NCBI GenBank assembly: GCA_053919585.1
Contig: CM132803.1
Origin: Euprymna scolopes
Lineage: Eukaryota
Direction: 5' to 3' (one strand)
Length of the DNA: 64,000 bases
Part shown: one piece after another, positions 4,150 to 58,480 of the stretch
Position numbering within the stretch: position 1 is the first letter of the stretch
Layout of the letters: each line of letters starts with the position of its first letter
Notes under the pieces: generated by a model
What the model was told of the DNA's origin: nothing
The model's database searches: none
The model's input: only the letters and a program-made list of their open reading frames with translations
Made by a program: the position numbers and the translations under genes

Positions 4150-6573
4150 ATGAGTTATAAATATACAGTAATGATGATGCTACACATAACTTTTATTGTT
4201 CTGTCTGCTTTACAAGGTTGTTTATGTACAGACCTTACCTACATTATTGAAGAAGGAAAAAGTCCAAATACATATTTAGGAAATATTGCAGTTGATTCAA
4301 ATATCATGGAAAATATTGATTCTAAAGACAATAAATTGATTTCATTCAGTTTATTGCAAGGAAGTATTGCAGGCAGTACTCAGTTATTCCGTGTTTCAAA
4401 GAATACAGGAAAACTGTACACTGCTCAAACATTGGATGCTGAATCACTTTGTACTTATAATGTAGAATGTTTTCAAATGGTTGATATTGCTGTAAAGAAA
4501 GCAGCAACTTTTATGAAATTAATTGAAATCAGAGTTATTATTAAAGATGTAAATGACCATCAACCTGAGTTCCCAGATAAACAAGTCAACATAAAATTTT
4601 CAGAAGAATCTACACAAGGGTCAAAACGTTTAATTCCAAATGCATTTGATCGAGATGTTGGAACTATTAATTCCCAGATTACTTATCATTTAAAAAATAA
4701 AGAAAATGAACCTTTTACTTTATTTATTTCAAAAAGTGTTGATGGAACATCACAATTAGCGATAAATCTAGAGAAAAAGCTTGATAGAGAAATTAAAATT
4801 TTTTATAAGATTGAAGTAATTGCAAAAGATGGAGGTTCTCCCCCAAAAGAAAGTACTCTTTACGTTCATATAACTGTAACTGATGTGAATGATAATTCTC
4901 CAGTGTTTTCTGAAAATTCTTATAATATTTCAATCAAGAATAAACCTGATGCTGCTTTGCCTCTGACTAGCTTATCAGCAAAGGATTTAGACTCTGGAGA
5001 AAATGGCAAAATCTCATACAGTTTCAGTTCAAAAACATCAGACGTTTCTAAAACTCATTTTGATTTAAACTCAGAAACTGGAGAAATTTTTCTAGTGAAG
5101 AAATTTACAACTGGGCAAAAACTGAAATATAAACTTTATGTTAAAGCTTCTGATGGAGGCAATCCTCCATTAAGTTCTCTGGCCATGATTCAAGTGAATG
5201 TGATTAATGAACAGAACAATGCGCCAACTATAAATATCAATTTTGCCTCAACATCTGGTGACAAATTTATGAAAATTTCAGAAGATATTAAGGTTGGAAG
5301 TTTTATTGCATATGTGAAAGTTACAGATCCAGATCTTGGACAAAATGGAGATGTTACTTGTACTCTTGATCACAATAAGTTTCAACTCCAAAGTCTGGAT
5401 ACAAAGAAATATCAAGTAATTGTAAAGAAACCAGTGGACAGAGAGAGTGAAGATCACCATGACATTAGGATCAGTTGTGAGGATAAAGGAAATCCTCCTC
5501 TTGAAAGTGAAAGCAGATTTTCAGTCCAAGTGATGGATGTGAATGATGAACAGCCACAATTTTCTAAACAATTATTTAAATTCTTCATTGATGAAAACCA
5601 GAGATCGAAAATTCCTATTGGCACAATCAATGCCACAGATCCAGACTTGGGACTTGGAGGTAAACTGTCTTTTTCTTTAGTGAGCACCAATAAACAATTT
5701 GTACCATTTCGAATCACTGAAAATGGATTAATCTCTTCAATTATGTCTTTAGACCATGAGTTTCAAGATACTTATAATTTTGAAGTGTTTGTAAAAGACA
5801 AAGGAAGTCCATCATTGAATAACACAGTGAATGTGATTGTTAAGGTGAGAGATGAAAATGATAATGCTCCATATTTCACATTTCCCAGTGTTAATCCTTA
5901 TAATATGGATGTAACATATTATCCGCATCATACAAAGAACATCAGCCAGATAAAGGCATCAGACAGTGACAGTCAAGAGAATGCATTTCTAAAATATGAA
6001 ATAATCAGAGGCAATAGCAAACAGATATTCAGCATCAACCAGTACACTGGTTTGTTATGTTCAACTCATGTCCTAAGCCAACAAGATGCTGGCTCATATG
6101 AGCTGGAGTTTCTAGTAAAGGACAGTGGTAGCCCAGTTCTATCAGCCAGAACTACTGTATATTTAACACTGACCGTAAGCAACAGGACATCAGAAATGTT
6201 AAATGCTGTTAACATCAAAAAAGATAATAAGATCCACCTGACTTCAGCAATTATCATTGTGTCTGTAGCAGTGACAATAGCTGTGATCATTACAGCTTCA
6301 ATCTCAGTGTGTATCCTTCGCTGTTGCAATCCTCGAAGTGTTCCAGTAGCAGAGGGTGGATATGTGAGTAGTGGTCAGAGACATTTGATAAGTCCTCCTT
6401 ACCCAGCCAATCCTTGGTCTAATGTTGCTCTTCCTACAAGTGATGCAGTTGATATGAGAAGAAGCAGTCAACCACCAACACCCAGAATGCAAACCCATCC
6501 TTACTCAAGTGCTCAACAAATGCTGTCATCTCAAGCACCAAAACTACAGCCAACTATGGATTCAGTATCACAG
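4150..6573 (+). CDS. Protocadherin g1 exon 2 (signal peptide, EC1-EC6, TM, proximal cytoplasmic tail)
   Basis: Acceptor ttcag ends 4105; first ATG 4150. Cadherin motifs DxNDxxP, LDRE, AxDxG; EC1 C-X5-C; TM AIIIVSVAVTIAVIITASISVCIL. Donor CAG|GTAATA after 6573 (phase 0). Confidence 0.93.
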
Positions 6574-6694
6574 GTAATATATTGGAATTGATTTAATTTG
6601 ATGTTATAAGTGTTTTCTAATATCAATGTTTTTATACATAAAAACCTATTATGTTTAGAATTTTTAGAAATGAGGACTAATAATTTGTAATATT

Positions 6695-7090: not shown

Positions 7091-7123
7091 ACTTAATTGT
7101 GAAAAGTACACCCAAATAGCAAT

Positions 7124-10873: not shown

Positions 10874-11157
10874 AGATATACCCATCACAATATTGTAATC
10901 CGCCACCATCAAAAAACGACCAGACCACAGAGATGAGATCCTTGGGACAAGTTGTCAGTTACCCTAGTGATACTACAATAGTGGCAAGAGGTTTTTATAC
11001 ACCTTATATGAATGAAAATAGCCCACTAACTGATGGAAAATCATATTTAGGTGCTGATATTAGCAGCCCTGTTGGTAGGCATTCACAATCGAGGACTGTG
11101 TCTGCTAGTGATAGTCAATCTTCTGTTAATAGACCCCTGCCACCTGTACCACAGTAA
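10874..11157 (+). CDS. Protocadherin g1 terminal coding exon
   Basis: tttag|AG ATA TAC CCA; EIYPSQYCNPPP...YPSDTTIVARGFYTPYMNE...NRPLPPVPQ-TAA. The spliced product is in frame, 956 aa. Confidence 0.9.
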
Positions 11158-13748: not shown

Positions 13749-16160
13749 ATGTTGCTATTAGTAAACACATTATTGCCAACATACATTCTACTATTAACTC
13801 TACATGGATCTGTATGCATTGATCTTACTTACACAACTGAAGAAGGTAAAAGTTCAAATACTTACTTGGGAAATATTGCAGTTGATTCAAATATCATGGA
13901 AAATATTGACTCCAGTGATTACAGGTCTATTACATTCAGTTTATTACAAGAAGGTGTTGGCAGTACTCCATTATTCCGTGTCTCTAAGAATACAGGAAAA
14001 CTATACACTGCACAAACACTGGATGCTGAATCACTTTGTACATATAATGTAGAATGTTTTCAAATGGTTGATGTTGCTGTGAAAAAGGCATCCACATTCA
14101 TTAAATTATTAGAAATCAAAGTTATCATTAAAGATGTAAATGACCATCAACCTGAGTTCCCAGATAAGCAAATTAATATTCAATTTGATGAAGATGATGG
14201 AAGAGGGGTGAAGAGGTTAATACCTCATGCTGTAGATAGAGATATTGGAATTTTGAATGCTCAAATTACCTATGAGTTGAAAAAGAAAAAAACAGAACCA
14301 TTTACATTATTTGTTTCAAAAAGTGTTGATGGAACATCTCAATTAGCTTTGAATTTGGAGGAAAAACTTGATAGAGAAATCAAAAGTTTATATCAAATTG
14401 AAGTAATTGCAAAAGATGGTGGCAATCCTTCAAAACAAGCGAGGTTAAATGTTCAAATCACTGTAATTGATGTGAATGATAATTTCCCAGTTTTTTCTGA
14501 AAATGTTTATAATGTTTCAATTAAAAACAAACCAGATGCTGTTTTGCCTATTACTACTCTATCTGCAAAAGATTTAGATTCTGGCAAAAATGGTCAAATA
14601 TTATATCATTTCAGTTCAAAAACATCAGATATTGCTAAAACTCATTTTGATTTAAAATCAGAAACTGGAGAAATTTTTCTAGTGAAAAAATTTACAACTG
14701 GACAAAAATTGAAATATAAACTTTATGTTAAAGCTTCTGATGGAGGCAATCCTCCATTAAGCTCTCTAGTAATGGTTCAAGTAAATGTGATCAATGAACA
14801 GAACAATGCGCCAACTATAAATATCAATTTTGCCTCAACATCTGGTGACAAATTTATGAAAATTTCAGAAGATATTAAGGTTGGAAGTTTTATTGCATAT
14901 GTGAAAGTTACAGATCCAGATCTTGGACAAAATGGAGATGTTACTTGTACTCTTGATCATAATAAGTTTCAACTCCAAAGTCTGGATACAAAGAAATATC
15001 AAGTAATTGTAAAGAAACCAGTGGACCGAGAGAGTGAAGATCACCATGACATTAGGATCAGTTGTGAGGATAAAGGAAATCCTCCTCTTGAAAGTGAAAG
15101 CAGATTTTCAGTCCAAGTGATGGATGTGAATGATGAACAGCCACAATTTTCTAAACAATTATTTAAATTCTTCATTGATGAAAACCAGAGATCGAAAATT
15201 CCTATTGGCACAATCAATGCCACAGATCCAGACTTGGGACTTGGAGGTAAACTGTCTTTTTCTTTAGTGAGCACCAATAAACAATTTGTACCATTTCGAA
15301 TCACTGAAAATGGATTAATCTCTTCAATTATGTCTTTAGACCATGAGTTTCAAGATACTTATAATTTTGAAGTGTTTGTAAAAGACAAAGGAAGTCCATC
15401 ATTGAATAACACAGTGAATGTGATTGTTAAGGTGAGAGATGAAAATGATAATGCTCCATATTTCACATTTCCCAGTGTTAATCCTTATAATATGGATGTA
15501 ACATATTACCCGCATCATACAAAGAACATCAGCCAGATAAAGGCATCAGACAGTGACAGTCAAGAGAATGCATTTCTAAAATATGAAATAATCAGAGGCA
15601 ATAGCAAACAGATATTCAGCATCAACCAGTACACTGGTTTGTTATGTTCAACTCATGTCCTAAGCCAACAAGATGCTGGCTCATATGAGCTGGAGTTTCT
15701 AGTGAAGGACAGTGGTAGCCCAGTTCTATCAGCCAGAACTACTGTATATTTGACACTGACCGTAAGCAACAAGACATCAGAAATGTTAAATGCTGTTAAC
15801 ATCAAAAAAGATAACAAGATCCACCTGACTTCAGCAATTATCATTGTGTCTGTAGCAGTGACAATAGCTGTGATCATTACAGCTTCAATCTCAGTGTGTA
15901 TCCTTCGCTGTTGCAATCCTCGAAGTGTTCCAGTAGCAGAAGGCGGATATGTGAGTAGTGGTCAGAGACATTTGATAAGTCCTCCTTACCCAGCCAATCC
16001 TTGGTCTAATGTTGCTCTTCCTACAAGTGATGCAGTTGATATAAGAAGAAGCAATCAACCACCAACACCCAGAATGCAAACCCATCCTTACTCAAGTGCT
16101 CAACAAATGCTGTCATCTCCAGCAAGAAAACCAGATTCAGCTCCAGACACCCTTTCACAG
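13749..16160 (+). CDS. Protocadherin g2 exon 2 (SP, EC1-6, TM, proximal tail)
   Basis: Acceptor ends 13694; ATG 13749; six cadherin repeats; donor CAG|GTAATG after 16160. Confidence 0.93.
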
Positions 16161-16578
16161 GTAATGTATTAGCTGTAATTTCCAAAATTATATTTTTCTG
16201 AATTATTAAAAAAGTTATATTGATACAGATTAACTTTTGATTAATCTCATAAATATACGAAAAAGATTTTGTCTTGATTAATTTTTTGTTCTTTTGTATG
16301 AATGACAGCTGCAATTGTCTAAAAAAAAAATCTCGATTGGCAAAGTTTTATTATCTCATTAATAACTTTTATAAATTTTAGTCATCACTATCTACTTCCT
16401 GCAAGCATATACTGTAATATACATGAACTCTTTTAATCATATAACATGAATGTTAAATATTTCTTCTTCTTTACTTTATACAATAATAAAATATAGATCT
16501 TAATTGCTGAGAATATTTAAATGTTCTCTTTACTTGATATAATATTCATTTCTTTTTTTAACTTTCGAATGTTTTCAG

Positions 16579-24956: not shown

Positions 24957-27353
24957 ATGTTTACAAGAATTTATTTGATTCTCTTTGTCATCCACATTTG
25001 TTTATGTGCGGATCTCATTTATTATGTGGAAGAAGGGAAAAGTCCAGGTACTTACCTGGGAGATGTTGCTACTGATTCGCTTGTGTTGAAGGATATATCA
25101 CCTCAAAATGCTCACCAAATTAGTTTTAGTCTTTTGCGAAAAGGTGCCACTGGCAGTTCGCCTTTATTCCGAATCTCTGAGAAATCTGGCAAACTATACA
25201 CTGCCCAAACATTAGATGCTGAATCACTTTGCCTCTTCAATAAGGAATGCTTTCAAATGGTTGATGTAGCAGTGAGAAAAGGAACAGCTGTTTTCAAATT
25301 ATTAGAAATTAAAGTAATCATTAAAGATATCAATGATCACCAGCCTGAGTTTCCAGAGAAAAAAGTCAGTATAACATTTTCAGAGGAATTTGCTAAAGGT
25401 GCAAGGCAGTCAATTCCAAATGCAATTGATAAAGATGTGGGAATTATTAATTCAAAAATAACATACGAGCTTATGAAGCAAAGAGAGCAACCTTTCTCTT
25501 TATTTGTATCTAAAAGTGTTGATGGAACATCAAAACTGAGCATAATTTTGGAAAAAAAACTTGATAGAGAAATAAAAGACTCTTACATGCTTCAAGTGAT
25601 TGCAAAAGATGGAGGTTCTCCACCTAAAGAAAGTGTTTTAAATGTTGACGTTATTGTCACAGATGTTAATGACAATATTCCTGTTTTCTCAAAGAAAGTT
25701 TACAATGTTTCAATCCAACATAATCATGACGAAGTACAACCTGTAACTGTATTGTCTGCTACAGATTTGGATTCTGGAAAGAATGGAAAAATTTTATACT
25801 ATACCAGTGTGAAAACAAATGATATAACAAGAAATGCTTTTAAAATAAATGAACAAACAGGTGAAATATTTCTAAACAAAAAAATGATTATAAGAAAAGA
25901 TTTGGTTTATGAGTTGTATGTTGAAGCTTCAGATGGGGGGAAACCTCCCTTGAGTGCATTGGCAAAGGTTTTAATAAATGTGATAAATGAACAAAATAAT
26001 GCTCCAATTATTGATGTAAACTTTATCTCAACATCAAAGGAAAATACAGTTGATGTTTCTGAAAACATAAAAGTTGGTAGTTTCATTGCTTATGTGAAAG
26101 TAAGTGATGAGGATGCTGGTCAGAATGGAGAGGTGAACTGTGAAATAAAACATGATAAATTTCAATTGCAAAACATGGGAACCAAGAAATACCAAGTGAT
26201 AGTGAAAACTCTTTTAGACAGGGAAACTGAAGATCATCACAGTATAATTATCAAATGTCAAGACAAAGGATCTCCTCCTCTTCAAAGCAAAAGGACATTT
26301 TCTGTACATGTGATTGATGTTAATGATGTAGAACCAGTGTTTTCTAAACAATTATTTAAATTCTTCATTGATGAAAACCAGAGATCGAAAATTTCTATTG
26401 GCACAATCAATGCCACAGATCCAGACTTGGGACTTGGAGGTAAACTGTCTTTTTCTTTAGTGAGCACCAATAAACAATTTGTACCATTTCGAATCACTGA
26501 AAATGGATTAATCTCTTCAATTATGTCTTTAGACCATGAGTTTCAAGATACTTATAATTTTGAAGTGTTTGTAAAAGACAAAGGAAGTCCATCATTGAAT
26601 AACACAGTGAATGTGATTGTTAAGGTGAGAGATGAAAATGATAATGCTCCATATTTCACATTTCCCAGTGTTAATCCTTATAATATGGATGTAACATATT
26701 ACCCGCATCATACAAAGAACATCAGCCAGATAAAGGCATCAGACAGTGACAGTCAAGAGAATGCATTTCTAAAATATGAAATAATCAGAGGCAATAGCAA
26801 ACAGATATTCAGCATCAACCAGTACACTGGTTTGTTATGTTCAACTCATGTCCTAAGCCAACAAGATGCTGGCTCATATGAGCTGGAGTTTCTAGTGAAG
26901 GACAGTGGTAGCCCAGTTCTATCAGCCAGAACTACTGTATATTTGACACTGACCGTAAGCAACAAGACATCAGAAATGTTAAATGCTGTTAACATCAAAA
27001 AAGATAACAAGATCCACCTGACTTCAGCAATTATCATTGTGTCTGTAGCAGTGACAATAGCTGTGATCATTACAGCTTCAATCTCAGTGTGTATTCTTCG
27101 CTGTTGCAATCCTCGAAGTGTTCCAGTAGCAGAAGGCGGATATGTGAGTAGTGGTCAGAGACATTTAATAAGTCCTCCTTACCCAGCCAATCCTTGGTCT
27201 AATGTTGCTCTTCCTACAAGTGATGCAGTTGATATGAGAAGAAGCAGTCAACCACCAACACCCAGAATGCAAACTCATCCTTATGCAAGCACTCAGCAAA
27301 TTTTATCTTCTCAAACAAGAAAACCTGAACCAGCTCCTGACTCTGTTTCACAG
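24957..27353 (+). CDS. Protocadherin g3 exon 2
   Basis: Acceptor ends 24912; ATG 24957; six cadherin repeats and TM; donor CAG|GTAAAT after 27353. Confidence 0.93.
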
Positions 27354-27554
27354 GTAAATCAAATTTTGTACTTCTTAATTTTTATATAATTTTAAAAAGT
27401 ACATAATGAATTTAAATTGTACATTTAACTGAACTTTTTCTGTTAACAATCATTTTTAATATTTACATATTGAATTAATTAAATAAATTATATAAATGTT
27501 TTCATATTTTAGCATTTCTTTTAAATTTTATTACTGTTTTACTATTCTATTTAG

Positions 27555-37815: not shown

Positions 37816-40212
37816 ATGATAGTGAAAATATATATTTTTATGATTATTTTCTCTTTATCTGAGTGTACAGACCTCACATATTATGTTGAGGAAGGCATAA
37901 GTCCTGGTACCTATTTGGGAGATATAGGTCTTGATTCGGAAGTGATGAAAGACACAACCCCAGAAGAAAAGAACAAAATTACTTTTAGTCTACTGCAACA
38001 AGGTCTCATTGGTACTTCTCCAATGTTTAGAATTTCAGAAAAATCAGGAAAACTCTACACAGCTCAAACTCTAGATGCTGAGGCTATTTGTACTTTTAAA
38101 AAAGAATGTTTTAAAATGGTTGATATTGCTGTTCAAAAAGCAACAACTGTTTTTAAATTGTTAGAAGTGAAAGTGATTATACAAGACATCAATGATCATC
38201 AACCTGAATTTCCAGATAAACAAGTTAATATTGAGTTTGAAGAAAGCATTGTTCCTGGAACAAAGATATTAATTCCAAATGCAATAGATAGAGATGTTGG
38301 TATTCTCAATTCTCAAATAACATATCATTTAAAAAGAAACAAAGATGAACCTTTTTCGTTATCAGTTGCAAAAAACGTAGATGGTACATCAAGATTGGAT
38401 ATAAATTTAGAAAGTCAACTTGACAGAGAAGTAAAGGACTCCTACAAGATTCAAGTGATTGCAAAAGATGGTGGATCTCCCCCAAAACAAAGTACATTAG
38501 ATGTTCTTATTACAGTGACAGATGTCAATGATAATGCTCCAATCTTTACTCAAAATGTTTATAATGTTACTGTTAACAACATGGTTGATACTAATAAAGC
38601 TGTGGCAACATTATCGGCAAAAGATTTGGATTCAGGTAAAAATGGAATGATTTCATATTATTTTAGTAGTAAAACTTCAGATATTGGCAAAAACATTTTT
38701 TCAATTAATGAAGATTCTGGAGAAATATTTTTCAATAAAAAGATAGAATTCATGCAGCAATCAACATATGAACTATATGTTAAAGCCGAAGATAAAGGTG
38801 ACCCTCCACTCAGTTCTATTGTAATGGTTGTAGTAAATTTAATTAATCAGCAGAATAATCCTCCAAGTATTAAAGTAAATTTTGTTTCAACATCAAAGGA
38901 CAACACAGTTGATATTTCTGAAGACATAAAAGTTGGTAGTTTCATTGCATACGTGAAAGTAATTGATACGGATATTGGCAATGATGGAGAGGTTAGTTGT
39001 TATCTTTCACATAAAAAATTTCAGCTTCGCAATATGGGCACACAGAAATATCAAGTTATAGTAAAAGATTATTTAGACAGAGAGAGGAATGACCATCATG
39101 ATATTATCATCGATTGTAAAGATAAAGGAAATCCTCCATTGAAAAGTAGAAGTAAATTTTCAGTCCATGTGATGGATGTGAATGATGAACAGCCACAATT
39201 TTCTAAACAATTATTTAAATTCTTCATTGATGAAAACCAGAGATCGAAAATTCCTATTGGCACAATCAATGCCACAGATCCAGACTTGGGACTTGGAGGT
39301 AAACTGTCTTTTTCTTTAGTGAGCACCAATAAACAATTTGTACCATTTCGAATCACTGAAAATGGATTAATCTCTTCAATTATGTCTTTAGACCATGAGT
39401 TTCAAGATACTTATAATTTTGAAGTGTTTGTAAAAGACAAAGGAAGTCCATCATTGAATAACACAGTGAATGTGATTGTTAAGGTGAGAGATGAAAATGA
39501 TAATGCTCCATATTTCACATTTCCCAGTGTTAATCCTTATAATATGGATGTAACATATTACCCGCATCATACAAAGAACATCAGCCAGATAAAGGCATCA
39601 GACAGTGACAGTCAAGAGAATGCATTTCTAAAATATGAAATAATCAGAGGCAATAGCAAACAGATATTCAGCATCAACCAGTACACTGGTTTGTTATGTT
39701 CAACTCATGTCCTAAGCCAACAAGATGCTGGCTCATATGAGCTGGAGTTTCTAGTGAAGGACAGTGGTAGCCCAGTTCTATCAGCCAGAACTACTGTATA
39801 TTTGACACTGACCGTAAGCAACAAGACATCAGAAATGTTAAATGCTGTTAACATCAAAAAAGATAACAAGATCCACCTGACTTCAGCAATTATCATTGTG
39901 TCTGTAGCAGTGACAATAGCTGTGATCATTACAGCTTCAATCTCAGTGTGTATCCTTCGCTGTTGCAATCCTCGAAGTGTTCCAGTAGCAGAAGGCGGAT
40001 ATGTGAGTAGTGGTCAGAGACATTTGATAAGTCCTCCTTATCCAGCAAATCCTTGGTCTAATGTTGCTCTTCCTACAAGTGATGCAGTTGATATGAGAAG
40101 AAGCAGTCAACCACCAACACCCAGAATGCAAACCCATCCTTACTCAAGTGCTCAACATATGTTACCATCTCAAGCACCAAAACCACAACCAGCACCAGAT
40201 TCTGTTTCACAG
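37816..40212 (+). CDS. Protocadherin g4 exon 2
   Basis: Acceptor ends 37759; ATG 37816; six cadherin repeats and TM; donor CAG|GTAAAT after 40212. Confidence 0.93.
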
Positions 40213-41162
40213 GTAAATTTATTGTTTTACTGTATAACTGTATTACATTTATTTCTGTACATTGTTTTCCTTATGTTTCTTTTTAATTTAAAAACTGCAA
40301 ATTACATTACAAATTAAATATCTGTAAAACATATTTGTTTGATATCAACATAAAATAAACTTATTGAAATTCACATGTATTGTTATAAATTTTCATTGTG
40401 GTAATAACAAAATGCTTTAATTTTCTATATTGACATAATTTAAAATATCTTGAATATCAAAAAGATACTTTTGTTTTATTTTATAAAATTATGCTGATAC
40501 TAATAAACTAAACAAGGGCATGATTAGTTTAATCTAAAACCGGGTACTAAAAAAAATTTTTAGATTTCATGGAATCATTGAAGATTTTATTAAAACATAC
40601 AAAAGAAAACTATCTTAAAAGTACCCGCACTTGCCTTTATTAAATTTTTCTTTCTTTTATTCTTTTAAATTACCATATGATTTTTTAAATAAATGTAATT
40701 TAAAGAAACAGATAAAAAATTGAAAGATTTTTAATGTTTTACTAATTATTCGTAAGTTTGTTTTGTTAAAGAATGAAAACAATGAATCTTTTTTGAAAAT
40801 TGCACTTTAAAACATTAATGAAAGGGAGAAAACTCATAATACTTACTTGGCTTAAATTTATGAATACTAATTTAACCATATTTACATTTATGAAAGCAAT
40901 AGTGGATGACTATGCAGTAAAACTCTCTATTGTCTCTATTCTACAAGCTAGAAAAATCAGTTTTAAAAAGCTTTATTAAATTAATAGCAGGACCTGTGTC
41001 CCAGCATTGGCCTAGTAAAATATAAAATACTTTCATTTGTTTCACTCTTCCATCCAGCATACTTCGAAGAGATCTGTTACATACACCATTTGAAAAAGGT
41101 GATCCCCCGAAATATGTTATGGAAAATTGTCAGACACAGTAGACCTCTTTAAGTAAGAATGA

Positions 41163-46291: not shown

Positions 46292-46433
46292 GCGGCCATT
46301 ACACAGGCATCAAACTACATAGGACATGTAGTTCCTCTGTAAAAGACAGGAAAATGGTGGATTATCTAAGTATTAAAAATAATACATCTATTAACATACC
46401 TTCTATTTGGTGTGAACAGATTTAAGAACAAAG
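46292..46433 (+). promoter_or_regulatory. g5 conserved promoter/5' element and putative non-coding exon 1
   Basis: GCGGCCATT(46292)-N19-TAGGAC(46320); donor AAAG|GTAAGT after 46433. Confidence 0.7.
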
Positions 46434-47138: not shown

Positions 47139-49544
47139 ATGCTGAAGCTGTTTCTGAAAACTTGTATTAACTTCTACATCTTACACTTTTGTGTGTGTAT
47201 GGATCTCGCTTACTATGTGGAAGAAGGGAAAAGTCCAGGTACTTACCTGGGAGATGTTGCTACTGACTCTCTTGTCTTGAAGGACATATCACCTCAAGAT
47301 GCTCATCAAATTAGTTTTGGTCTTTTGCAAAAAAGTGCAACTGGCAGTTCACCATTATTCCGAATCTCTGAGAAATCTGGCAAACTCTACACTGCCCAAA
47401 CATTAGATGCTGAATCACTTTGCCTTTTCAATAAAGAATGTTTTCAAATGGTTGATGTAGCAGTGAGGAAAGGAACCACTGTTTTCAAATTAATGGAAAT
47501 TAAAGTAGTTATTAAAGATATCAATGATCATCAGCCAGAATTCCTTGAAAAACAATCAACTCTTACGTTTAGTGAAGATGATCGAAAAGGGGCCAGAAGA
47601 TCAATTCCAAATGCAATTGACAAAGATGTTGGAATTATTCATTCTAAAATAACCTATGAGCTTAAAAGGCAAAGAGAGAAACCTTTTTCTTTGCTTGTAT
47701 CTAAAAGTGTTGATGGAACATCAAAATTGAGTATAATTTTAGAAAAACCTCTTGATAGAGAAGTAAAAGACTCTTACATGCTTCAAGTGATTGCAAAAGA
47801 TGGAGGTTCTCCACCTAAAGAAAGTGTTTTAAATGTTGACGTTATTGTCACAGATGTTAATGACAATATTCCTGTTTTCTCACAGAAAGTTTACAACATC
47901 TCAATCCAACACAATCATGAGGAAACGAAACCTGTTACTGTATTGTCTGCTACAGATTTGGATTCTGGAAAGAATGGAAAAATTTTATATCATACCAGTG
48001 TGAAAACAAATGAAATGACAAGAAATGCCTTTAAATTGAATGAAAAAACTGGAGAAATATTCCTTAAAAAGAAAATCACTTTGAGAAAAGATATAATGTA
48101 TGAATTATATGTTGAAGCATCGGATGAAGGTAGTCCACCATTAAGTTCATTATCAATGGTTTTAATAAATGTGATAAATGAACAAAATAATGCTCCAATT
48201 ATTGATGTAAATTTCTTCTCAACATCAAAGGAAAATACAGTTGATGTTTCTGAAAATATAAAAGTTGGTAGTTTCATTGCTTATGTGAAAGTAAGTGATG
48301 AGGATGCTGGTCAGAATGGAGAGGTGAACTGTGAAATAAAACATGATAAATTTCAATTGCAAAACATGGGAACCAAGAAATACCAAGTGATAGTGAAAAC
48401 TCTTTTAGACAGGGAAACTGAAGATCATCACAGTATAATTATCAAATGTCAAGACAAAGGATCTCCTCCTCTTCAAAGCAAAAGGACATTTTCTGTACAT
48501 GTGATTGATGTTAATGATGTAGAACCAGTGTTTTCTAAACAATTATTTAAATTCTTCATTGATGAAAACCAGAGATCGAAAATTCCTATTGGCACAATCA
48601 ATGCCACAGATCCAGACTTGGGACTTGGAGGTAAACTGTCTTTTTCTTTAGTGAGCACCAATAAACAATTTGTACCATTTCGAATCACTGAAAATGGATT
48701 AATCTCTTCAATTATGTCTTTAGACCATGAGTTTCAAGATACTTATAATTTTGAAGTGTTTGTAAAAGACAAAGGAAGTCCATCATTGAATAACACAGTG
48801 AATGTGATTGTTAAGGTGAGAGATGAAAATGATAATGCTCCATATTTCACATTTCCCAGTGTTAATCCTTATAATATGGATGTAACATATTACCCGCATC
48901 ATACAAAGAACATCAGCCAGATAAAGGCATCAGACAGTGACAGTCAAGAGAATGCATTTCTAAAATATGAAATAATCAGAGGCAATAGCAAACAGATATT
49001 CAGCATCAACCAGTACACTGGTTTGTTATGTTCAACTCATGTCCTAAGCCAACAAGATGCTGGCTCATATGAGCTGGAGTTTCTAGTGAAGGACAGTGGT
49101 AGCCCAGTTCTATCAGCCAGAACTACTGTATATTTGACACTGACCGTAAGCAACAAGACATCAGAAATGTTAAATGCTGTTAACATCAAAAAAGATAACA
49201 AGATCCACCTGACTTCAGCAATTATCATTGTGTCTGTAGCAGTGACAATAGCTGTGATAATTACAGCTTCAATCTCAGTGTGTATCCTTCGCTGTTGCAA
49301 TCCTCGAAGTGTTCCAGTAGCAGAAGGCGGATATGTGAGTAGTGGTCAGAGACATTTGATAAGTCCTCCTTACCCAGCCAATCCTTGGTCTAATGTTGCT
49401 CTTCCTACAAGTGATGCAGTTGATATGAGAAGAAGCAGTCAACCACCAACACCCAGAATGCAAACTCATCCTTACTCAAGCGCTCAGCAAATTTTATCTT
49501 CTCAAGCAAGAAAACCAGACCCAATTTCAGATTCTGTTTCACAG
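47139..49544 (+). CDS. Protocadherin g5 exon 2
   Basis: ATG 47139 (acceptor either directly before it or at ~47061); six cadherin repeats and TM; donor CAG|GTAAAT after 49544. Confidence 0.93.
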
Positions 49545-49735
49545 GTAAATCAAAATTTCAGTAATTTTTATATAAATTTGAAAGTGTTTTTATATCAAAT
49601 TTGTCTCTAATTTTCATTGCACATTAAACTTAAAATTTTCTACTAACAATTCATATTTTTACATTTTCAATATATCCTTTTTTGATATAATGTGTAAATA
49701 ATTTTTCATTTTTAGTGTTTTACTCTTCTATTTAG

Positions 49736-51022: not shown

Positions 51023-52447
51023 CTTTATTTCAATTTTTAAATGAGTTTTGTTTTTTATTGTGTGGATTTTTCATAGAAAGATTCTATAGTTTCGGTATTT
51101 TAGTTATAAATTTACTTCATTGATTCAAGATAACATTCCATATTTTTCTTAATAATAACAAACATGTTCATCAGTTTTCTAACACTACTATATGGATGCT
51201 GATATAGTTAAAATGCAGAATAGAAATTAAGCCCTGTATTTGTGTGCATATCATTTTTACGATGGAGCAAAGCATACTGTCTAAATATTTAGATGTATCT
51301 TTCCTTTAAATTGATTTGGAAAGTAATTTTAGATCACCAGATTATCAAAAAATCTTTATAATGTATAAATAGATACATATTACAGAAAACATGTTCCTGT
51401 AGCAAGAAAATAAATTTATTGTCTTACATTTTTATTGAACATTATTTATTAAGCAATGTTATTTATTCAAATGAGGTCCATCATGATCACAAATGTTATT
51501 TAGCTTTAGCATTTCTTGATAATCTTGATATTTAGATAAAAAAAAATAAGAAAAAACTCATCTCTGAAATGGACAATGTGGAGAGATGCTTTGAAAGATG
51601 CTATCAAAATATCCAGTACTTGTGACAACTAAAAAATATATTCAACTAGATGATGATGATAATGATAATGATGATGATAGTCCCTATAAATCAAGTTTTA
51701 AAATTCCAAATTATATTTTTCAAATTTTACAAATAAAACTATCAAGTGTATTTTTTCTTAATATTGCATTCTTAAGTTTATTTTAAGTACAATATTTTAT
51801 TATGGATTTACACAGTTGTTTTTTTGTTTTTGTTTTTTTTTTGTTTTTTTGCATAGCTTGAGGAATTGAATTTTAAAACTTTTAGCTGGGAGGTGATTGG
51901 TTTTGAAGAATTTCAGGATGAAAAAAGTTACATTATCGAGTTGATCGTGTCTGGACACATCAGACTAGAAACATAAGAAAAGGGTCACCATCCTCCATGA
52001 ATAACACTAGACACTTCCACTAAAATATAAATCAACTATTATTTGAAGGAAACATTGTATATAAAGAGAGTTACTAAGTTTGCTAGCTTTTGTCTCAAAC
52101 AAAATGTGGTATCTTGCCATTCCATATCTCACCTAATCGGTTCTACCATAGGATGAGAACAAGATAGCTCTTGTTAGCACGGAATTTACTTGAAAACTGA
52201 TTTGTATTTGGCACACATCCAGCTAGGATGGAAATCAGATTCCAGTGCGCATGTCATTGGTTTGCTAATTGCTTGTGTATCAATATGCTTACTGAACTAC
52301 AACTTGACATAATGCAGGATTTTATGTACAGCTACTACAAACTAGAAAGAATGTTATGAATACTTTCTATATAAGATTCAACATTAAATTTCTCATATGT
52401 TAAATTAATGACCTTGTTATGTACTGATATTTTAAAATTCTTTTCAG

Positions 52448-52737
52448 ATATATACCCTTCTCAATATTGTAATCCTCCGCCTTCACAAATTGATCAATGC
52501 CGTACAACAGAGACAAGACCCTTAGGACAGACTGTCAGCTATCCTAGTGATACAACAATAGTAGCAAGAGGTTTCTACACATCCTACATGAATGAAAATA
52601 GTCCTCATGCAGATGCAAAGTCTGACTCTGGTGGTGAAAACAATAGTTTATCTAGTAGACAGTTACAATCAAGAAATATATCTACAAGTGGTAGCCAGTC
52701 TTCAATCAACAGACCACTACCACCCTTACCATCCTAA
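52448..52737 (+). CDS. Protocadherin g5 terminal coding exon
   Basis: ttcag|AT ATA TAC; DIYPSQYCNPPP...YPSDTTIVARGFYTSYMNE...NRPLPPLPS-TAA; spliced product 950 aa. Confidence 0.9.
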
Positions 52738-53429
52738 AAATAATATGCCATTACTATAATCATTAACAAAATATATATTTACTCAAAATCTTAAGGTTTT
52801 TAAAATTTATTGGATAGTTAGTTTTTTTTAATTTAAACCTAATTAAAATACTTTCACTTCCAAAAAAAGTTTATAAGTCTAAATCATATATTTCTTTGCA
52901 TAGAATTCCCACTTATTGAAATAATGTATCTTCTTTATTTTATTAAAATAGTTCTTCATATTATTGAGTACAAGAAAATGTTTTTGTTATGCTGCTTTAT
53001 TAAGCCTTTGTTTAACCAGTACTTGAAATAAATTTCTGTCATGTATTTTATTTTACTGAATTTTTTTAATCTTATATTTTTTAAAATTATTATTTTAATT
53101 TCTCCTGGCTTCATCAAATCTTCCCTTCTATCATTACATCTAAATTTATTTTTCTAAAGTTATATTCCTTGAAATCTGATAACAAATAAATGAATAGCCA
53201 ACTTGTAAAGTCATTGAAAACTCACTAGGATCATTTATTAACATTATCATAAAATATAAAATAAAAAAAATGCTATTGAAGAAATTAAGCTAAATTTATT
53301 AAAAATGCATGTCTGTAGTAAAATATAATTTGTATATAACACATGAAGCTGTAGTTCCAATCCATTTGGTTGCTAGTTTATTTATCCACAGATTCCTACA
53401 AGAGTTTTAGAGATAGACACCAATAACAA

Positions 53430-53853
53430 TATATATTCTAATTACCCGGGTATTTTGAAACATAAGTTTAAGAATATCATGGGATTTGTATTTGTACTTG
53501 ACATACATATTAAAGACATACTTCTTTTTTACATTATTTTATTGATTTGTTAAAAATTATAGGGATTTAAAAAATAATAGAAATTTTAATAATAGATTAA
53601 AAACTTGCAACCAAAGTGCAGACTGGTACTCAATAATTTCCAGCATATGCTAGGTGTGTTCAAGGGTCTAAGTACTATAAATTTACTGACATTTATTTCA
53701 ATTAATATCACTTTACTTACACCCTCTTCCACCAGTCAATGTTGAGTAAATCATTGAGTTTCAATAAAAATATTGAATAAAGAAAATAATAGGCTGAGAG
53801 CTAAAGGGCAAATTACTCATACAGTCCTGGACAACGCCGGATGTACCTGCTAG
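53430..53853 (+). mobile_element. Helitron-like 3' end (5' boundary uncertain)
   Basis: CCTGGACAACGCCGGATGTACCTGCTAG|T at 53826-53853 resembles the 3' end at 21946-21973. It is absent from the homologous g3-g4 spacer. Confidence 0.5.
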
Positions 53854-54134
53854 TTATAAAATAAGCTAACGTTGCTTATTCTATATAATTTGTTAAAACG
53901 ATAAGTTTACCATGACAGAAAGAAAAGTAAAAATATAATGGACGAATAACACTTTTTCATTGCATTTTAAGAATTATTATCCTTTTATTAGATAAAATTT
54001 AACTCAATATTTAATCATTTCTTTTTTAATTTATTAAAATAATGGCATAAGGATTTTTTTTTTTTTTTTAATGTATAAACCCGTTTTCGTAGTTTCGTAG
54101 CCTATAATGCTTTACTCTCTAAAGAGTGTTTATA

Positions 54135-54288
54135 GCAGCCATTTTACAGACTGCATAAGACATAGGACTGCTGGATAATATCTAGAGTGAAACAAAGAAA
54201 AACATGTCACCATGATGGAATAAAGCAGTATTATGTGATGTGTTCTCGATGTTGTTTTCATATAGTATAAACAACTTTCAGAACAAAG
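54135..54288 (+). promoter_or_regulatory. g6 conserved promoter/5' element and putative non-coding exon 1
   Basis: GCAGCCATT(54135)-N19-TAGGAC(54163); donor AAAG|GTAAGT after 54288; closely similar to the g4 region. Confidence 0.7.
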
Positions 54289-56080
54289 GTAAGTTGCTTT
54301 TATCTAATTTTACTATTTTTATATATTATAGTGCAAGAAAGTCTAGAGAGAAAATTGTAAAAAATGAATTGCAAGATAATTTTCATCAGTCATAATGTAC
54401 AGAAAATGTACACATGATATAGATTAATCAAAATAAGGACTACTGAATATTTCTGCATGGTTTTCCTTTTATATTCAGTACATTTTCTTTAATCATTTTT
54501 TATAATGAATCTTTTATTTATTAATATTTCAGAATAAATATAATTTATTAGAAGCTTTTTAGGAAATAATTGTTTTTAATCGTTTTATTTTAATTGTATA
54601 TTTTACTTTTAAATTAATATAGAATATTTATGTATCTGTTTCTAAAATTCTCTATTATTCTATAATCTTTGATGAAAATAATTAAATGTCCTTTTTCATT
54701 TCTCAATTAGATATATACCATGTACATCTCATTTTGATATTTCCAACTTGATTAATACAAGTAATAACTGATACAGGAGTATAAAAATCATTTCTGAAAT
54801 ATTTTCTACTGATATTAATGTTTGAAAAGTTAAAAACATGTTAGAAGAACAAAAACTAAAATAGCACAATTTTATGGCCATTTTCATCCATCTATTTATT
54901 GCTATCATTCTAATTGTGATAATAAACAACTTTTCAGTTTTAAGATACATAACTTTTATCATAAATATTTAAATTCATAGATCTTTATAATTATAAGATG
55001 GTAATAAGATGTTTCTCATCTATACATATTATTTTTAATTATTTTAAAAAATTTTAATCAGATACTAAGATTTAAAAAATTCCAAGACATAAAATGAAAC
55101 AAAATTTTTTAAAATCTTCTTTAAAAATATAATTTAATTACAAAATTAAATCCATCAGTTTCTTCACACACAAATTAGTCACTTTAATCTTTTATTAATA
55201 GTTATAAAAAGAATGAGTTATTTGTAATCCTTGGAAATTTTATAGGAGCTTGAAAGCATTTAAACTGTCATTTCTGGTTTTAACATTTTTAGCAAATTTT
55301 CGTGTATTAAATGTTTTAGAAGCTATTTATATCCAATCACTTTATAATATAGAAAAGAATTAGTTATATTTTTATAACAACTTGGTCGCAAAAATGATAC
55401 CATAATAATTAAATTTAACATCCAAAATCCTATAAATAAGAAAATGGTAAAAAATGCATAGCTTTATTGAAAAAAAAAAGGGTGAAACGAAAATGAAAAT
55501 AAAAAGCATTGTGTAGGTATAGCTAGTTGTCCATATTTTATTACAATAAATCAGTATTGTAATTATATTTTATAATTTTATGTGTTTACTTGAAATTTTT
55601 TGTTTATTTGAAAGAGTTTGTTTATTTCTCACAATTGTAACTTTACATATTTTTTTTATTTAATTACTGATATGAAAATTTGGACCTTAATTTGAATCTT
55701 ATGCTTTTTCTTTTTAAGAAAATATCTAGGTCTATATAAAGAGAACAATGAAAAACCTTGTTGATTTATTTTTCAAAATAAAAGTACCATAATTTTTCAT
55801 GTTCTGGAAATTTTTATGTTAGCAAATGGTTTTGCCAATAGAAATATTATTTTATTTTTTATATTTATTCATAATAATGATTGTTAAGACAAACAGAAAT
55901 GCAGTCTTGAATTTGAAATGATATTATAATATTTTTCTACTGAATTATAAAGAAAAATACTTTTCACATAATATGTAAAATTTAATGTATACTTTAAAAC
56001 TGTGACAGTGTATTTTTTTTTTTTTTTCATATTTCAGATATCAGAATCAACACATTGAAAATAATTATTCATAAGTAAAA

Positions 56081-58480
56081 ATGATAATATTACAATCATA
56101 CATCCTTATGTGTATCTTGCCTCTGTTTAAGTGCATAGATCTCACATATTATGTTGAGGAAGGTATAAGTCCTGGAACTTACTTAGGAGATATAGGTATT
56201 GACTCAGAAGTGATGAAAGACACATCTCCAGATGAACAAAATAAAATTACTTTTAGCCTGTTACAACAAGGTGTCATTGGTACTTCTCCAATGTTTAGAA
56301 TTTCAGAAGAATCAGGAAAACTCTACACAGCTCAAACTCTAGATGCTGAGACTATTTGTACTTTTAAAAAAGAATGTTTTAAAATGGTTGATATTGCTGT
56401 TCAAAAAACAACAACTGTTTTTAAATTGTTAGAAGTGAAAGTGATTATACAAGACATCAATGATCATCAACCTGAATTTCCAGATAAAAAAGTTAATATT
56501 GAGTTTTCTGAAGGTGACCGAAAAGGAATGAGAAAAATTATCGCAAATGCAATAGACAGAGATGTTGGTGTTCTCAATTCTCAAATAACCTACCATTTAA
56601 AAAGAAACAAAGATGAACCTTTTTCGTTATCAGTTGCAAAAAACGTCGATGGTACATCAAGATTGGATATAAATTTAGAAAGCCAACTCGACAGAGAAAT
56701 AAAAGATTCCTACAAGATTCAAGTGATTGCAAAAGATGGTGGATCTCCAGCAAAACAAAGTACATTAGATGTTCTTATTACAGTGACAGACGTCAATGAT
56801 AATGCTCCAATCTTTACTCAAAATGTTTATAATGTTACTGTTAACAACATGGTTGATACTAATAAAGCTGTGGCAACATTATCGGCAAAAGATTTGGATT
56901 CAGGTAAAAATGGAATGATTTCATATTATTTTAGTAGTAAAACTTCAGATATTGGCAAAAACATTTTTACAATTAATGAAGATTCTGGAGAAATATTTTT
57001 CAATAAAAAGATAGAATTCATGCAGCAATCAACATATGAACTATATGTTAAAGCCGAAGATAAAGGTGACCCTCCACTCAGTTCTATTGTAATGGTTGTA
57101 GTAAATTTAATTAATCAGCAGAATAATCCTCCAAGTATTAAAGTAAATTTTGTTTCAACATCAAAGGACAACACAGTTGATATTTCTGAAGACATAAAAG
57201 TTGGTAGTTTCATTGCATACGTGAAAGTAATTGATACGGATATTGGCAATGATGGAGAGGTTAGTTGTTATCTTTCACATAAAAAATTTCAGCTTCGCAA
57301 TATGGGCACACAGAAATATCAAGTTATAGTAAAAGATTATTTAGACAGAGAGAGGAATGACCATCATGATATTATCATCGATTGTAAAGATAAAGGAAAT
57401 CCTCCATTGAAAAGTAGAAGTAAATTTTCAGTCCAAGTGATGGATGTGAATGATGAGCAGCCACAATTTTCTAAACAATTATTTAAATTCTTCATTGATG
57501 AAAACCAGAGATCAAAAATTCCTATTGGCACAATCAATGCCACAGATCCAGACTTGGGACTTGGAGGTAAACTGTCTTTTTCTTTAGTGAGCACCAATAA
57601 ACAATTTGTACCATTTCGAATCACTGAAAATGGATTAATCTCTTCAATTATGTCTTTAGACCATGAGTTTCAAGATACTTATAATTTTGAAGTGTTTGTA
57701 AAAGACAAAGGAAGTCCATCATTGAATAACACAGTGAATGTGATTGTTAAGGTGAGAGATGAAAATGATAATGCTCCATATTTCACATTTCCCAGTGTTA
57801 ATCCTTATAATATGGATGTAACATATTACCCACATCATACAAAGAACATCAGCCAGATAAAGGCATCAGACAGTGACAGTCAAGAGAATGCATTTCTAAA
57901 ATATGAAATAATCAGAGGCAATAGCAAACAGATATTCAGCATCAACCAGTACACTGGTTTGTTATGTTCAACTCATGTCCTAAGCCAACAAGATGCTGGC
58001 TCATATGAGCTGGAATTTCTAGTGAAGGACAGTGGTAGCCCAGTTCTATCAGCCAGAACTACTGTATATTTGACACTGACCGTAAGCAACAAGACATCAG
58101 AAATGTTAAATGCTGTTAACATAAAAAAAGATAACAAGATCCACCTGACTTCAGCAATTATCATTGTGTCTGTAGCAGTGACAATAGCTGTGATCATTAC
58201 AGCTTCAATCTCAGTGTGTATCCTTCGCTGTTGCAATCCTCGAAGTGTTCCAGTAGCAGAAGGTGGATATGTGAGTAGTGGTCAGAGACATTTGATAAGT
58301 CCTCCTTACCCAGCCAATCCTTGGTCTAATGTTGCTCTTCCTACAAGTGATGCAGTTGATATGAGAAGAAACAGTCAACCACCAACACCCAGAATGCAAA
58401 CTCATCCTTACTCAAGCAATCAACAAATGCTGTCGTCTCAAGCACCAAAACCACAGCTACCTGCAGACTCCGTTTCACAG
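56081..58480 (+). CDS. Protocadherin g6 exon 2
   Basis: Acceptor ends 56037; ATG 56081; six cadherin repeats and TM; donor CAG|GTATAT after 58480. Confidence 0.93.

What the first reader, a model, noticed from the sequence alone, without database searches (positions are those of the whole stretch)
4597..56545. Hypervariable ~10-residue patch at the start of EC2 separates each sister pair, with a recurring two-state pattern
Seen: g4 and g6 are almost identical from mid-EC1 through EC4, yet differ in FEESIVPGTKILIP (38236) versus FSEGDRKGMRKIIA (56504). Likewise g1 FSEESTQGSKR (4597) versus g2 FDEDDGRGVKR (14184), and g3 FSEEFAKGARQ (25377) versus g5 FSEDDRKGARR (47568). In each of the three lineages one member has a charged E(D/G)D(G/R)(R/K)G version, and g5/g6 share GAAG-TGA-CGAAAAGG at the DNA level. 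Known: EC2/EC3 surfaces carry trans specificity in vertebrate clustered Pcdhs. Inference: a specificity-determining loop under diversifying selection or swapped by micro-conversion.
Basis: partly seen in the sequence, partly recalled or inferred. Interest (0 to 1): 0.72.

Follow-up and report, generated by a model that had tools for sequence, protein, structure and literature searches.

The report
Conversion-resistant EC2 loop in cephalopod protocadherins
In a squid/cuttlefish-type array of neuronal adhesion (protocadherin) genes, neighbouring genes keep overwriting each other's sequence except for a 13-25-codon loop at the start of the second cadherin domain; that loop stays old and different, probably because it tunes which partner the protein binds, much as in vertebrate protocadherins.

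Summary
All six coordinates and peptides match. In all three pairs the most divergent DNA segment of EC1-EC4 falls on the same patch (permutation p 0.0005 to 0.005). Contigs from two public runs bridge the g6 version.

The patch is not a fast-evolving loop in recent duplicates.
- Synonymous divergence is saturated inside it and low (0 to 0.3) in the g4/g6 and g3/g5 flanks next to it.
- A closely related five-gene array (unnamed ENA contig) has the same gene order.
- In the g3/g5 pair, the flanks group by array (68 sites). The 19-residue patch region groups by orthologue (7 sites, none the other way; Fisher p 3e-8).

So the "sisters" are old paralogues homogenised by gene conversion, and the patch is an island that escapes it.

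In 20 independent close paralogue pairs from other cephalopod contigs, the patch is the top difference hot spot (46% against a 12.5% mean). It is also the window least coupled to the rest of EC1-4.

By alignment, its second half equals Pcdh10 T122-P125, at the base of the EC2:EC3 trans interface.

The "two-state" pattern is weak and post hoc. The origin of the g6 patch is unresolved. Any role in specificity is inferred, not shown.

This is a convergent, finer-scale variant of what is known from vertebrate protocadherin clusters.

The parts
4096..6591 (+). g1: protocadherin large exon (6 cadherin repeats, TM, proximal tail). The true start is probably an internal ATG, because the listed ORF begins at TTG. 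CAG|GTAA splice donor at about 6576.
13749..16172 (+). g2: protocadherin large exon. It differs from g1 across the whole of EC2.
24957..27389 (+). g3: protocadherin large exon, A-type. Positional and patch orthologue of P0004.
37816..40317 (+). g4: protocadherin large exon, B-type. Five Pfam Cadherin stretches. The EC1-4 model matches protocadherin EC1-4 structures.
47139..49610 (+). g5: protocadherin large exon, A'-type. Positional and patch orthologue of P0122.
56081..58489 (+). g6: protocadherin large exon, B'-type. Positional counterpart of P0001.
4600..4638 (+). g1 patch, 13 codons (SEESTQGSKRLIP): end of EC2 strand A, the A-B loop and the start of strand B.
14187..14225 (+). g2 patch (DEDDGRGVKRLIP).
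25344..25418 (+). g3 25-codon tract that includes the patch (SEEFAKGARQSIP). It is orthologue-conserved with P0004: 22 of 25 residues in the tract, 12 of 13 in the patch.
38239..38277 (+). g4 patch (EESIVPGTKILIP). T149-K150-I151-L152 align to Pcdh10 T122-R123-F124-P125.
47535..47609 (+). g5 25-codon tract that includes the patch (SEDDRKGARRSIP) and the unusual PEFL. It shares 21 of 25 residues with P0122.
56507..56545 (+). g6 patch (SEGDRKGMRKIIA). It is 41% nt-identical to g4, with flanks at 98.5% and 94.7%. Contigs of two runs bridge it.

Best explanation
The patch is the outward-facing surface formed by the end of strand A, the A-B loop and the first residues of strand B at the membrane-proximal base of cadherin repeat 2.

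The genes in this array are old paralogues. Their coding sequence is repeatedly homogenised by gene conversion: completely from EC5 onward, and in blocks of different age in EC1-EC4. The patch is a 13-25-codon island that escapes this homogenisation, so it keeps the original deep divergence between paralogues. Within each gene lineage it evolves no faster than the rest.

The most likely reason it survives is selection against conversion events that would erase it. By homology, this surface sits at the base of the EC2:EC3 contact of the antiparallel EC1-4 trans dimer, where it would tune the binding preference or affinity of each isoform.

Shown here:
- the mosaic of coalescence ages;
- orthologue-type inheritance of the g3/g5 island;
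- family-wide recurrence of the hot spot;
- the structural position of the patch.

Inferred:
- that cephalopod protocadherins form the canonical dimer;
- that the island is kept by selection;
- that it changes binding.
For: 1. Ages differ sharply. NG86 dS in the patch or tract of the 'sister' pairs is saturated or 0.7-1.6, like non-sister paralogues. Flanking dS is 0.00 (g4/g6 EC1b, EC3, EC4), 0.22 (g4/g6 rest of EC2) and 0.25-0.31 (g3/g5 EC1b and rest of EC2). The two g4/g6 flanks also differ in age: 0 of 65 codons against 10 of 82 codons carry synonymous-only changes (Fisher p 0.0024). That fits separate conversion tracts ending at the patch.

2. Four-sequence site patterns for g3, g5 | P0004, P0122: 68 sites group by array, 8 group by orthologue and 0 go the other way. 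Seven of the eight lie in g3 residues 133-151 (Fisher p 2.9e-8). In the tract, identity is g3-P0004 88% and g5-P0122 84%, against g3-g5 64% and P0004-P0122 60%. Every other segment shows the reverse.

3. Gene order P0004-P0121-P0122-P0001-P0014 mirrors g3-g4-g5-g6-g7. The paralogues therefore predate the split of the two arrays.

4. The pattern is general. In 20 disjoint close paralogue pairs that exclude the window's genes, the patch window is the top hot spot: 46% differing, against a 12.5% mean and 28% for the next window. P0004 and P0122 differ at 13 EC1-4 residues, 10 of them in the tract. Among variable 13-residue windows the patch has the lowest correlation with identity of the rest of EC1-4 (r 0.07-0.12, others 0.12-0.48; the next lowest is another EC2 window at 0.12).

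5. Variable positions alternate with invariant core and calcium positions. Positions 138, 140, 142, 144-147, 149 and 151 vary, while I139, F141, E143, G148 and I153 do not. This is the pattern of a surface.

6. Position. The model gives strand 136-142, loop 143-149 and strand 150-153 in g4 numbering. A gap-free alignment maps 149-152 to Pcdh10 T122-P125, which appose the partner's EC3 G strand. The EC2 A-B-E-D face is the EC2:EC3 interface (PMC7082078). g4 E140 aligns to gammaB residue 111, a described EC2:EC3 specificity contact.

7. GC3 is lowest in EC2 (0.10-0.22) and rises to 0.35-0.37 in EC6. This is as expected if conversion is rarest in EC2 (same test as in fugu, PMC1852091).
Against: 1. 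g4/g6 have identical EC3 G-strand partners, and P0004/P0122 have 99% identical EC3. In a simple additive antiparallel dimer, a one-sided change makes the heterodimer as stable as the mean of the two homodimers. The patch alone would then change affinity rather than give strict homophilic specificity.

2. Mutual information on about 126 sequences found no coupling of patch positions to EC3.

3. For g4/g6 the related array carries the g4-type patch in both positional counterparts. An ancient g6 island is therefore not shown.

4. The organism of the ENA contig is unnamed and its DNA could not be fetched. 'Orthologue' rests on protein identity and gene order. It could be a paralogous array of a related genome; the logic would stay the same.

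5. Selection is inferred. A short, very diverged segment might also hinder heteroduplex extension on its own.

6. Family-wide, the patch ranks only about seventh among 13-residue windows for raw variability.
Confidence: 0.6

Rival explanations
1. Micro-conversion import. The patch of one member of a pair, above all g6, was recently pasted in from another paralogue by a conversion tract of about 40-75 nt. The flanks are similar because the pair is otherwise homogeneous.
For: - Near-identical 13-residue patch types recur in paralogues that are only about 60% identical overall. SEDDRKGARRSIP, with at most one change, occurs in g5, P0002, P0016, P0104 and P0119. The xEGDxKGMRK type of g6 occurs on many contigs.
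- g5 and g6 share 16 of 18 nt and the uncommon Arg codon CGA (7 of 61 Arg codons).
- Both positional counterparts of g4 and g6 in the related array carry the g4-type patch.
- The patch is decoupled from the rest of the ectodomain.
Against: - The g3/g5 difference is shared with P0004/P0122, including the odd PEFL. It is therefore older than the split of the arrays.
- The g4/g6 flanks have different ages.
- No donor better than 64% nt identity exists in the window.
Confidence: 0.2
2. Neutral heterology barrier. The island persists without selection because conversion tracts that start in the homologous flanks stop at a segment that is already too diverged.
For: The island is saturated (41-69% nt identity between any two genes). 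The g4/g6 flanks look like two separate tracts ending at it.
Against: - It does not explain why the same 13 residues are the hot spot in 20 independent pairs.
- It does not explain why only outward-facing positions vary.
- It does not explain why the g3-type and g5-type patches are each conserved at 12 of 13 residues between arrays.
- In P0001/P0121 the patch is homogeneous, which is compatible with such a segment being overwritten.
Confidence: 0.12
3. Recent duplicates with rapid diversifying point substitution in the loop.
For: dN in the patch (0.4-0.9) exceeds dN elsewhere, even between non-sister genes. Some patch dN/dS estimates are about 0.8-1.5, but on 13 codons only.
Against: - Synonymous sites are saturated in the patch but not beside it in g4/g6 and g3/g5.
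- Most differing patch codons of g4/g6 differ at two or three positions, and a serine is encoded by TCA in g3 but AGT in g5.
- The g3/g5 states are old and conserved.
- Gene order is conserved between the arrays.
Confidence: 0.04
4. Artefact: an assembly chimera or a compensated frameshift.
For: Near-identical paralogues are prone to mis-assembly.
Against: - Contigs from two studies bridge the g6 patch with at most 2 differences. A separate contig shows the g4 form.
- Shifted-frame identity is no higher: 7-14 of 39, against 16 in frame.
- The same phenomenon occurs in other assemblies.
Confidence: 0.01

Closest known systems
Regional gene conversion in vertebrate clustered protocadherin arrays (zebrafish, fugu, human; Noonan et al. 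2004 as cited in PMC6339937; Yu et al. 2007, PMC1852091)
   Same: Tandem paralogues share a 3' part (EC4/5 to the cytoplasmic tail) that is about 99% identical and has raised GC3. The N-terminal recognition domains, especially EC2-EC3, stay diverse and are said to be under diversifying selection.
   Different: - This is an independent, cephalopod-specific expansion.
- Conversion here also sweeps EC1, most of EC2, EC3 and EC4 within pairs, leaving an island of only 13-25 codons instead of whole domains.
- The island is shown to be shared between two arrays.
- The genes are reported to be complete multi-exon duplicates, not variable exons spliced to shared constant exons (PMC9068888).
EC2:EC3 part of the antiparallel EC1-4 trans dimer of delta2 and clustered protocadherins (PMC7082078; PMC5106212; PMC5001838)
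   Same: - The EC1-4 model and sequence match these proteins best.
- Patch residues align without gaps to Pcdh10 T122-P125 and to gammaB 111-125, which contact the partner's EC3.
- The patch is conserved in orthologues and varied in paralogues, the criterion used there for specificity residues.
   Different: - In delta2 protocadherins this base region is conserved across the subfamily. Here it is the most paralogue-specific spot.
- No cephalopod dimer structure or binding assay exists.
- The EC3 partner strand does not co-vary in g4/g6.
Cephalopod protocadherin expansions (Albertin et al. 2015 and 2022, PMC9068888; Styfhals et al. 2019, PMC6339937)
   Same: [quoted passage not shown] Those papers suggest homogenisation by gene conversion in general terms.
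   Different: The papers I could search describe no sub-domain map of converted and protected segments, and no EC2 island.

Membership tests
Protocadherin (cadherin superfamily, six-repeat type) | Several cadherin repeats with calcium-binding linker motifs, one TM helix, and best matches to protocadherins | tested here: met
   - Pfam Cadherin E 2.8e-82 with 5 stretches.
- Linker motifs DxNDxxPxF at g4 124, 236, 454 and 559, with a degenerate one at 343.
- Top solved-structure hits are delta2 and gamma protocadherins.
Vertebrate-type clustered protocadherin locus | Variable first exons spliced to shared constant exons at the end of the cluster | not tested
   Each large exon ends at a conserved CAG|GTA donor, but downstream exons were not mapped. 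PMC9068888 states that cephalopod genes are complete duplicates without shared exons.
Canonical antiparallel EC1-4 trans dimer | EC1 contacts EC4 and EC2 contacts EC3 of the partner | not testable with these tools
   Only a monomer could be modelled. One indirect hint: the strongest long-range covariation in about 126 relatives links EC1 V112/T111/Q84 to EC4 Q413/R445/K443. No patch-EC3 signal was seen.
Concerted evolution by gene conversion with a protected island | Paralogues within an array are more alike than orthologues in the converted parts, with near-zero dS there | tested here: met
   - g3-g5 are 91-99.5% identical against 84-92% to P0004/P0122 outside the tract, except in EC3 where the four are about equally distant.
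- g4-g6 are 92-100% identical against 83-93% to P0001/P0121 outside the tract.
- dS 0-0.06 in EC3-EC4 of g4/g6 and in EC4-cyt of the pairs.
- The GC3 gradient fits.
Concerted evolution by gene conversion with a protected island | The island shows orthologue-type (trans-array) inheritance | tested here: met
   - g3/g5 | P0004/P0122: 7 orthologue-type sites in residues 133-151 and none of the opposite type (p 2.9e-8).
- Not met for g4/g6.
- Only weakly, and EC2-wide, for g1/g2.
Positively selected (omega > 1) specificity loop | dN/dS above 1 at the sites under a model that allows for recombination | tested here: inconclusive
   There are only 13 codons, dS is saturated, and recombination is pervasive. 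Pairwise patch dN/dS ranges from 0.25 to 1.55. PAML- or MEME-type tests were not run because their assumptions fail here.

The most novel reading that the evidence does not exclude
The 13-residue EC2 patch is a discrete, ancient 'identity cassette'. On this reading, a small set of patch classes is older than the present sub-arrays and species of decapodiform cephalopods. Candidate classes are DDRKGARR, GDxKGMRK, DVVPGTKI, GDIMGTKI, NDKKGTKV and ESxKGAKR. The rest of each ectodomain would be a locally homogenised scaffold. Recognition identity in cephalopod protocadherins would then be encoded largely by this one loop, a more compact code than in vertebrates. Natural pairs such as P0004/P0122 or g4/g6 would be ready-made single-loop swap experiments.
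Probability: 0.25. Interest if true: 0.75.

Novelty: new variant of a known kind. Interest (0 to 1): 0.58.

Why it matters
Whether the huge, independently evolved protocadherin families of cephalopods act as isoform-specific recognition tags, as in vertebrate neurons, is untested.

This result points to one short loop as the part that evolution keeps distinct while everything around it is homogenised. It also supplies natural protein pairs that differ almost only there:
- g4/g6: 19 differences between mid-EC1 and the end of EC4, 10 of them in the patch;
- P0004/P0122: 13 differences in EC1-4, 10 of them in the tract.

That turns the question into a simple binding or cell-aggregation experiment. 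It is also a clean example of selection and gene conversion interacting at the scale of tens of nucleotides, convergent with vertebrate protocadherin clusters.

Tried and rejected
- DNA of the related 237-kb ENA contig could not be fetched because the sample file is too large. All cross-array tests are therefore at protein level, and no orthologue dN/dS could be computed.
- Covariation (MI with APC correction on about 126 sequences) gave no partner in EC3 for the patch. The data set is too small and too related to count as a negative.
Pervasive recombination and saturated dS in a 13-codon target make them unreliable. Pairwise NG86 by segment was used instead.
- A compensating frameshift was rejected, and so was an assembly artefact.
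- RNA contigs did not cover the g6 patch (X3 has zero depth at 56528-56615). Expression of g6 is therefore not shown.
- Rubinstein 2015, Goodman 2016 (Neuron) and Noonan 2004 are not held in the library. Their content is cited only through papers that were readable.
- The 'two-state switch' idea was set aside because the motif was defined after the fact and is simply the commonest family motif.
- The AlphaFold monomer has odd inter-domain angles (rmsd about 50 A to crystal structures, TM about 0.43). Only its secondary structure was used.
Full report
**What is in the window**

The window holds six complete tandem ORFs on the + strand, and a seventh is cut by the window's end. The ORFs are 802-833 aa long and about 10 kb apart.
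- Each ORF encodes a signal peptide, six cadherin repeats, a TM helix and a proximal tail.
- Each ends at a conserved CAG|GTA splice donor.
- The best named relatives are protocadherins of the cuttlefish Acanthosepion pharaonis, at about 60% identity.
- The closest relatives (70-87%) lie on an unnamed 237,501-bp ENA contig that carries about 17 paralogues.
- Solved-structure searches and a fold search put EC1-4 next to delta2 and clustered protocadherins.
- From EC5 to the tail all six genes are 97-99% identical at DNA level. EC1-EC4 fall into three look-alike pairs: g1/g2, g3/g5 and g4/g6.

**Checking the observation**

- g4 and g6 differ at 10 of 13 patch residues, against 9 of the other 377 residues between mid-EC1 and the end of EC4.
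- The 39-nt patch of g4/g6 is 41% identical, the lowest value of any gene pair. Its flanks are 98.5% and 94.7% identical.
- A maximum-scoring-segment scan finds the most divergent DNA segment of EC1-EC4 at the same place in all three pairs, with permutation p <=0.0005, <=0.0005 and <=0.005.
- A compensating frameshift does not explain it.
- Contigs from two public runs of different studies bridge the g6 patch. Another contig follows g6 up to 56506 and then reads the g4 patch. Both forms therefore exist in real DNA.
- For g1/g2 the difference is not limited to the patch. The rest of EC2 is only 78% identical in DNA.

**What kind of divergence this is**

If the pairs were young duplicates with a fast-evolving loop, only non-synonymous sites should be elevated in the patch. 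That is not what the data show.
- Synonymous divergence in the patch or tract is saturated or 0.7-1.6, as between non-sister genes. Beside the patch it is 0.00 to 0.31 in g4/g6 and g3/g5.
- Most differing patch codons of g4/g6 differ at two or three positions, and a serine is TCA in g3 but AGT in g5.
- In g4/g6 the two flanks have different ages: 0 of 65 codons against 10 of 82 codons carry synonymous-only changes (p 0.0024).
- The N-terminal half of EC1 in g4/g6 is old at silent sites (dS 0.75) although the protein is conserved there.
- The genes are therefore mosaics of blocks with different coalescence times, which is the signature of repeated gene conversion. The patch is one of the old blocks.
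- GC3 is lowest in EC2 and highest in EC6, in line with conversion being rarest in EC2. Yu et al. used the same test in fugu (PMC1852091).

**The related array**

The 90%-identity clusters of the closest relatives each hide a second member on the same contig.
- Gene order there is P0004 - P0121 - P0122 - P0001 - P0014. This mirrors g3 - g4 - g5 - g6 - g7.
- Intergenic homology inside the window also shows a duplicated two-gene unit.
- For the four sequences g3, g5, P0004 and P0122, every segment outside the tract except EC3 groups by array. Examples are EC1 (g3-g5 92%, P0004-P0122 98%, cross 84-86%) and EC4 (99% and 100%, cross 92-93%). In EC3 the g3-g5 identity (80%) is no higher than the cross-array values (79-85%).
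- The 25-residue tract groups the other way: g3-P0004 88% and g5-P0122 84%, against g3-g5 64% and P0004-P0122 60%.
- By site pattern, 68 sites are array-type, 8 are orthologue-type and 0 are the opposite type. Seven of the eight orthologue-type sites lie in g3 residues 133-151 (Fisher p 2.9e-8). g5 and P0122 even share the unusual PEFL in place of PEFP.
- So the g3/g5 patch difference is older than the split of the two arrays, and the flanks were homogenised afterwards within each array.
'Orthologue' therefore rests on protein identity and synteny.
- For g4/g6, both counterparts (P0121, P0001) carry the g4-type patch. Either the related array lost the second state by conversion, or g6 gained its patch later. 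I cannot tell which.
- For g1/g2, the counterparts are P0124 and P0009. The whole of EC2 rather than the patch shows weak orthologue-type inheritance.

**Generality**

The window's own genes were excluded from this test.
- In 20 disjoint pairs of close paralogues (82-97% identity in EC1-4) from other cephalopod contigs, the 13-residue window at the patch differs at 46% of positions. The mean is 12.5% and the next window reaches 28%. The four next windows are also in EC2.
- Within the related array, P0004/P0122 differ at 13 EC1-4 residues, 10 of them in the tract. P0003/P0125 differ at 20, 8 of them in the tract.
- Among all variable 13-residue windows, the patch has the weakest correlation between its own pairwise identity and that of the rest of EC1-4: r 0.07-0.12, against 0.12-0.48 for the others, the next lowest being another EC2 window.
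- In raw family-wide entropy it ranks only about seventh. It is not the most variable spot, but it is the most decoupled one.
- The same patch types recur on many contigs.
The strict pattern occurs in 14% of relatives and the loose pattern in 53%. The two-state idea is therefore weak and post hoc.

**Where the patch sits**

- The AlphaFold model of g4 EC1-4 (mean pLDDT 82) gives strand A at g4 136-142, a loop at 143-149 and strand B at 150-153.
- E143 is the calcium-binding Glu, and G148, I153, A156, D158 and D160 are invariant or nearly so. Positions 138, 140, 142, 144-147, 149 and 151 vary in alternation with conserved core residues. This is the pattern of an exposed face.
- Gap-free alignments map g4 T149-K150-I151-L152 onto human Pcdh10 T122-R123-F124-P125.
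- Harrison et al. describe exactly these residues as apposed to the partner's EC3 G strand at the base of the EC2:EC3 interface. They describe the A-B-E-D face of EC2 as the interface (PMC7082078).
- g4 E140 aligns with gammaB residue 111, a described EC2:EC3 specificity contact.
- Orthologue-conserved and paralogue-varied interface residues are what the vertebrate work treats as specificity determinants (PMC5001838, PMC5106212).
- A side result supports the same overall dimer. The strongest long-range covariation in the family links the EC1 G-strand region (V112, T111, Q84) to EC4 (Q413, R445, K443).

**Limits on the functional reading**

- No cephalopod dimer has been modelled or measured.
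- The patch shows no covariation with EC3 in my small data set.
- The EC3 partner strand is identical in g4/g6 and almost identical in P0004/P0122. In an additive antiparallel dimer, a one-sided change alters affinity but does not by itself disfavour the heterodimer.
- The patch may therefore tune binding strength, or act through contacts near the two-fold axis, rather than give strict homophilic specificity.
- A neutral heterology barrier could also help an already diverged island persist. However, it does not explain the recurrence of the same positions in independent pairs, the surface-only pattern, or the conservation of each g3/g5 patch state between arrays.

**Comparison with what is known, and verdict**

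- Regional gene conversion with spared EC2-EC3 diversity is established for vertebrate protocadherin clusters.
- For cephalopods, gene conversion has been suggested only in general terms (PMC9068888, PMC6339937). I found no description of a protected EC2 loop.
- Earlier notes of this scan reported the homogenised EC5-tail block in this genome, which I confirm here.
- The present finding is a convergent, much finer-grained variant of a known phenomenon. It is not a new mechanism.
Its interpretation is partly right about place and likely role, but wrong about process for at least the g3/g5 pair.

Noticed in passing
window 861-1165, 10885-11151, 22969-23266, 34792-35096, 45179-45472, 52441-52739, 61595-61888: A block of about 300 bp, 70-77% identical between copies, lies 2.0-3.6 kb upstream of each of the seven genes. 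It could be a shared regulatory element, a 5' exon or an old repeat.
   Followed up: no
window 33929-36279 vs 50000-54462; 45154-47506 vs 61569-63994: Intergenic homology (76-89%) shows that g3-g4, g5-g6 and g7 onward arose as a duplicated two-gene unit. The same A-B-A'-B'-A'' order is found in the related ENA contig.
   Followed up: partly
g4 residues 84, 111, 112 (EC1) and 413, 443, 445 (EC4); window about 38065-38151 and 39052-39150: The strongest long-range covariation in about 126 family members links the EC1 G-strand region to EC4 (z up to 9.5). This would be expected for an antiparallel EC1:EC4 contact. The data set is small and the sequences are related, so it is only suggestive.
   Followed up: partly
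window 37897-38031 (g4) vs 56159-56293 (g6), first half of EC1: A second old block in the g4/g6 pair: dS 0.75 but dN/dS 0.07. It is old at silent sites yet conserved as protein, unlike the patch. In the related array P0001 and P0121 differ mainly in this part of EC1.
   Followed up: partly
window about 6576, 16163, 27356, 40215, 49547, 58483: All six large exons end at a conserved TCACAG|GTA splice donor. The paralogue DNA alignments mostly end within about 20 nt of it; g3/g5 homology runs about 400 nt further. Downstream exons were not mapped.
   Followed up: no
window 4096-4170: The listed g1 ORF starts at TTG and has 18 extra residues. The real start is probably one of the ATG codons just before the signal peptide.
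   Followed up: no
g4 residues 223-235, window about 38482-38520 (EC2 F-G loop and G strand): This is the second most decoupled variable window of EC1-4 (r 0.124) and the third-ranked hot spot in close paralogue pairs. EC2 may hold a second small identity surface.
   Followed up: no
window 55900-58600: Runs labelled as two other organisms (B and C) hold about half of the sampled 31-mers of the g6 stretch. This is possibly the homogenised EC5-tail half shared with close relatives. It was not examined.
   Followed up: no
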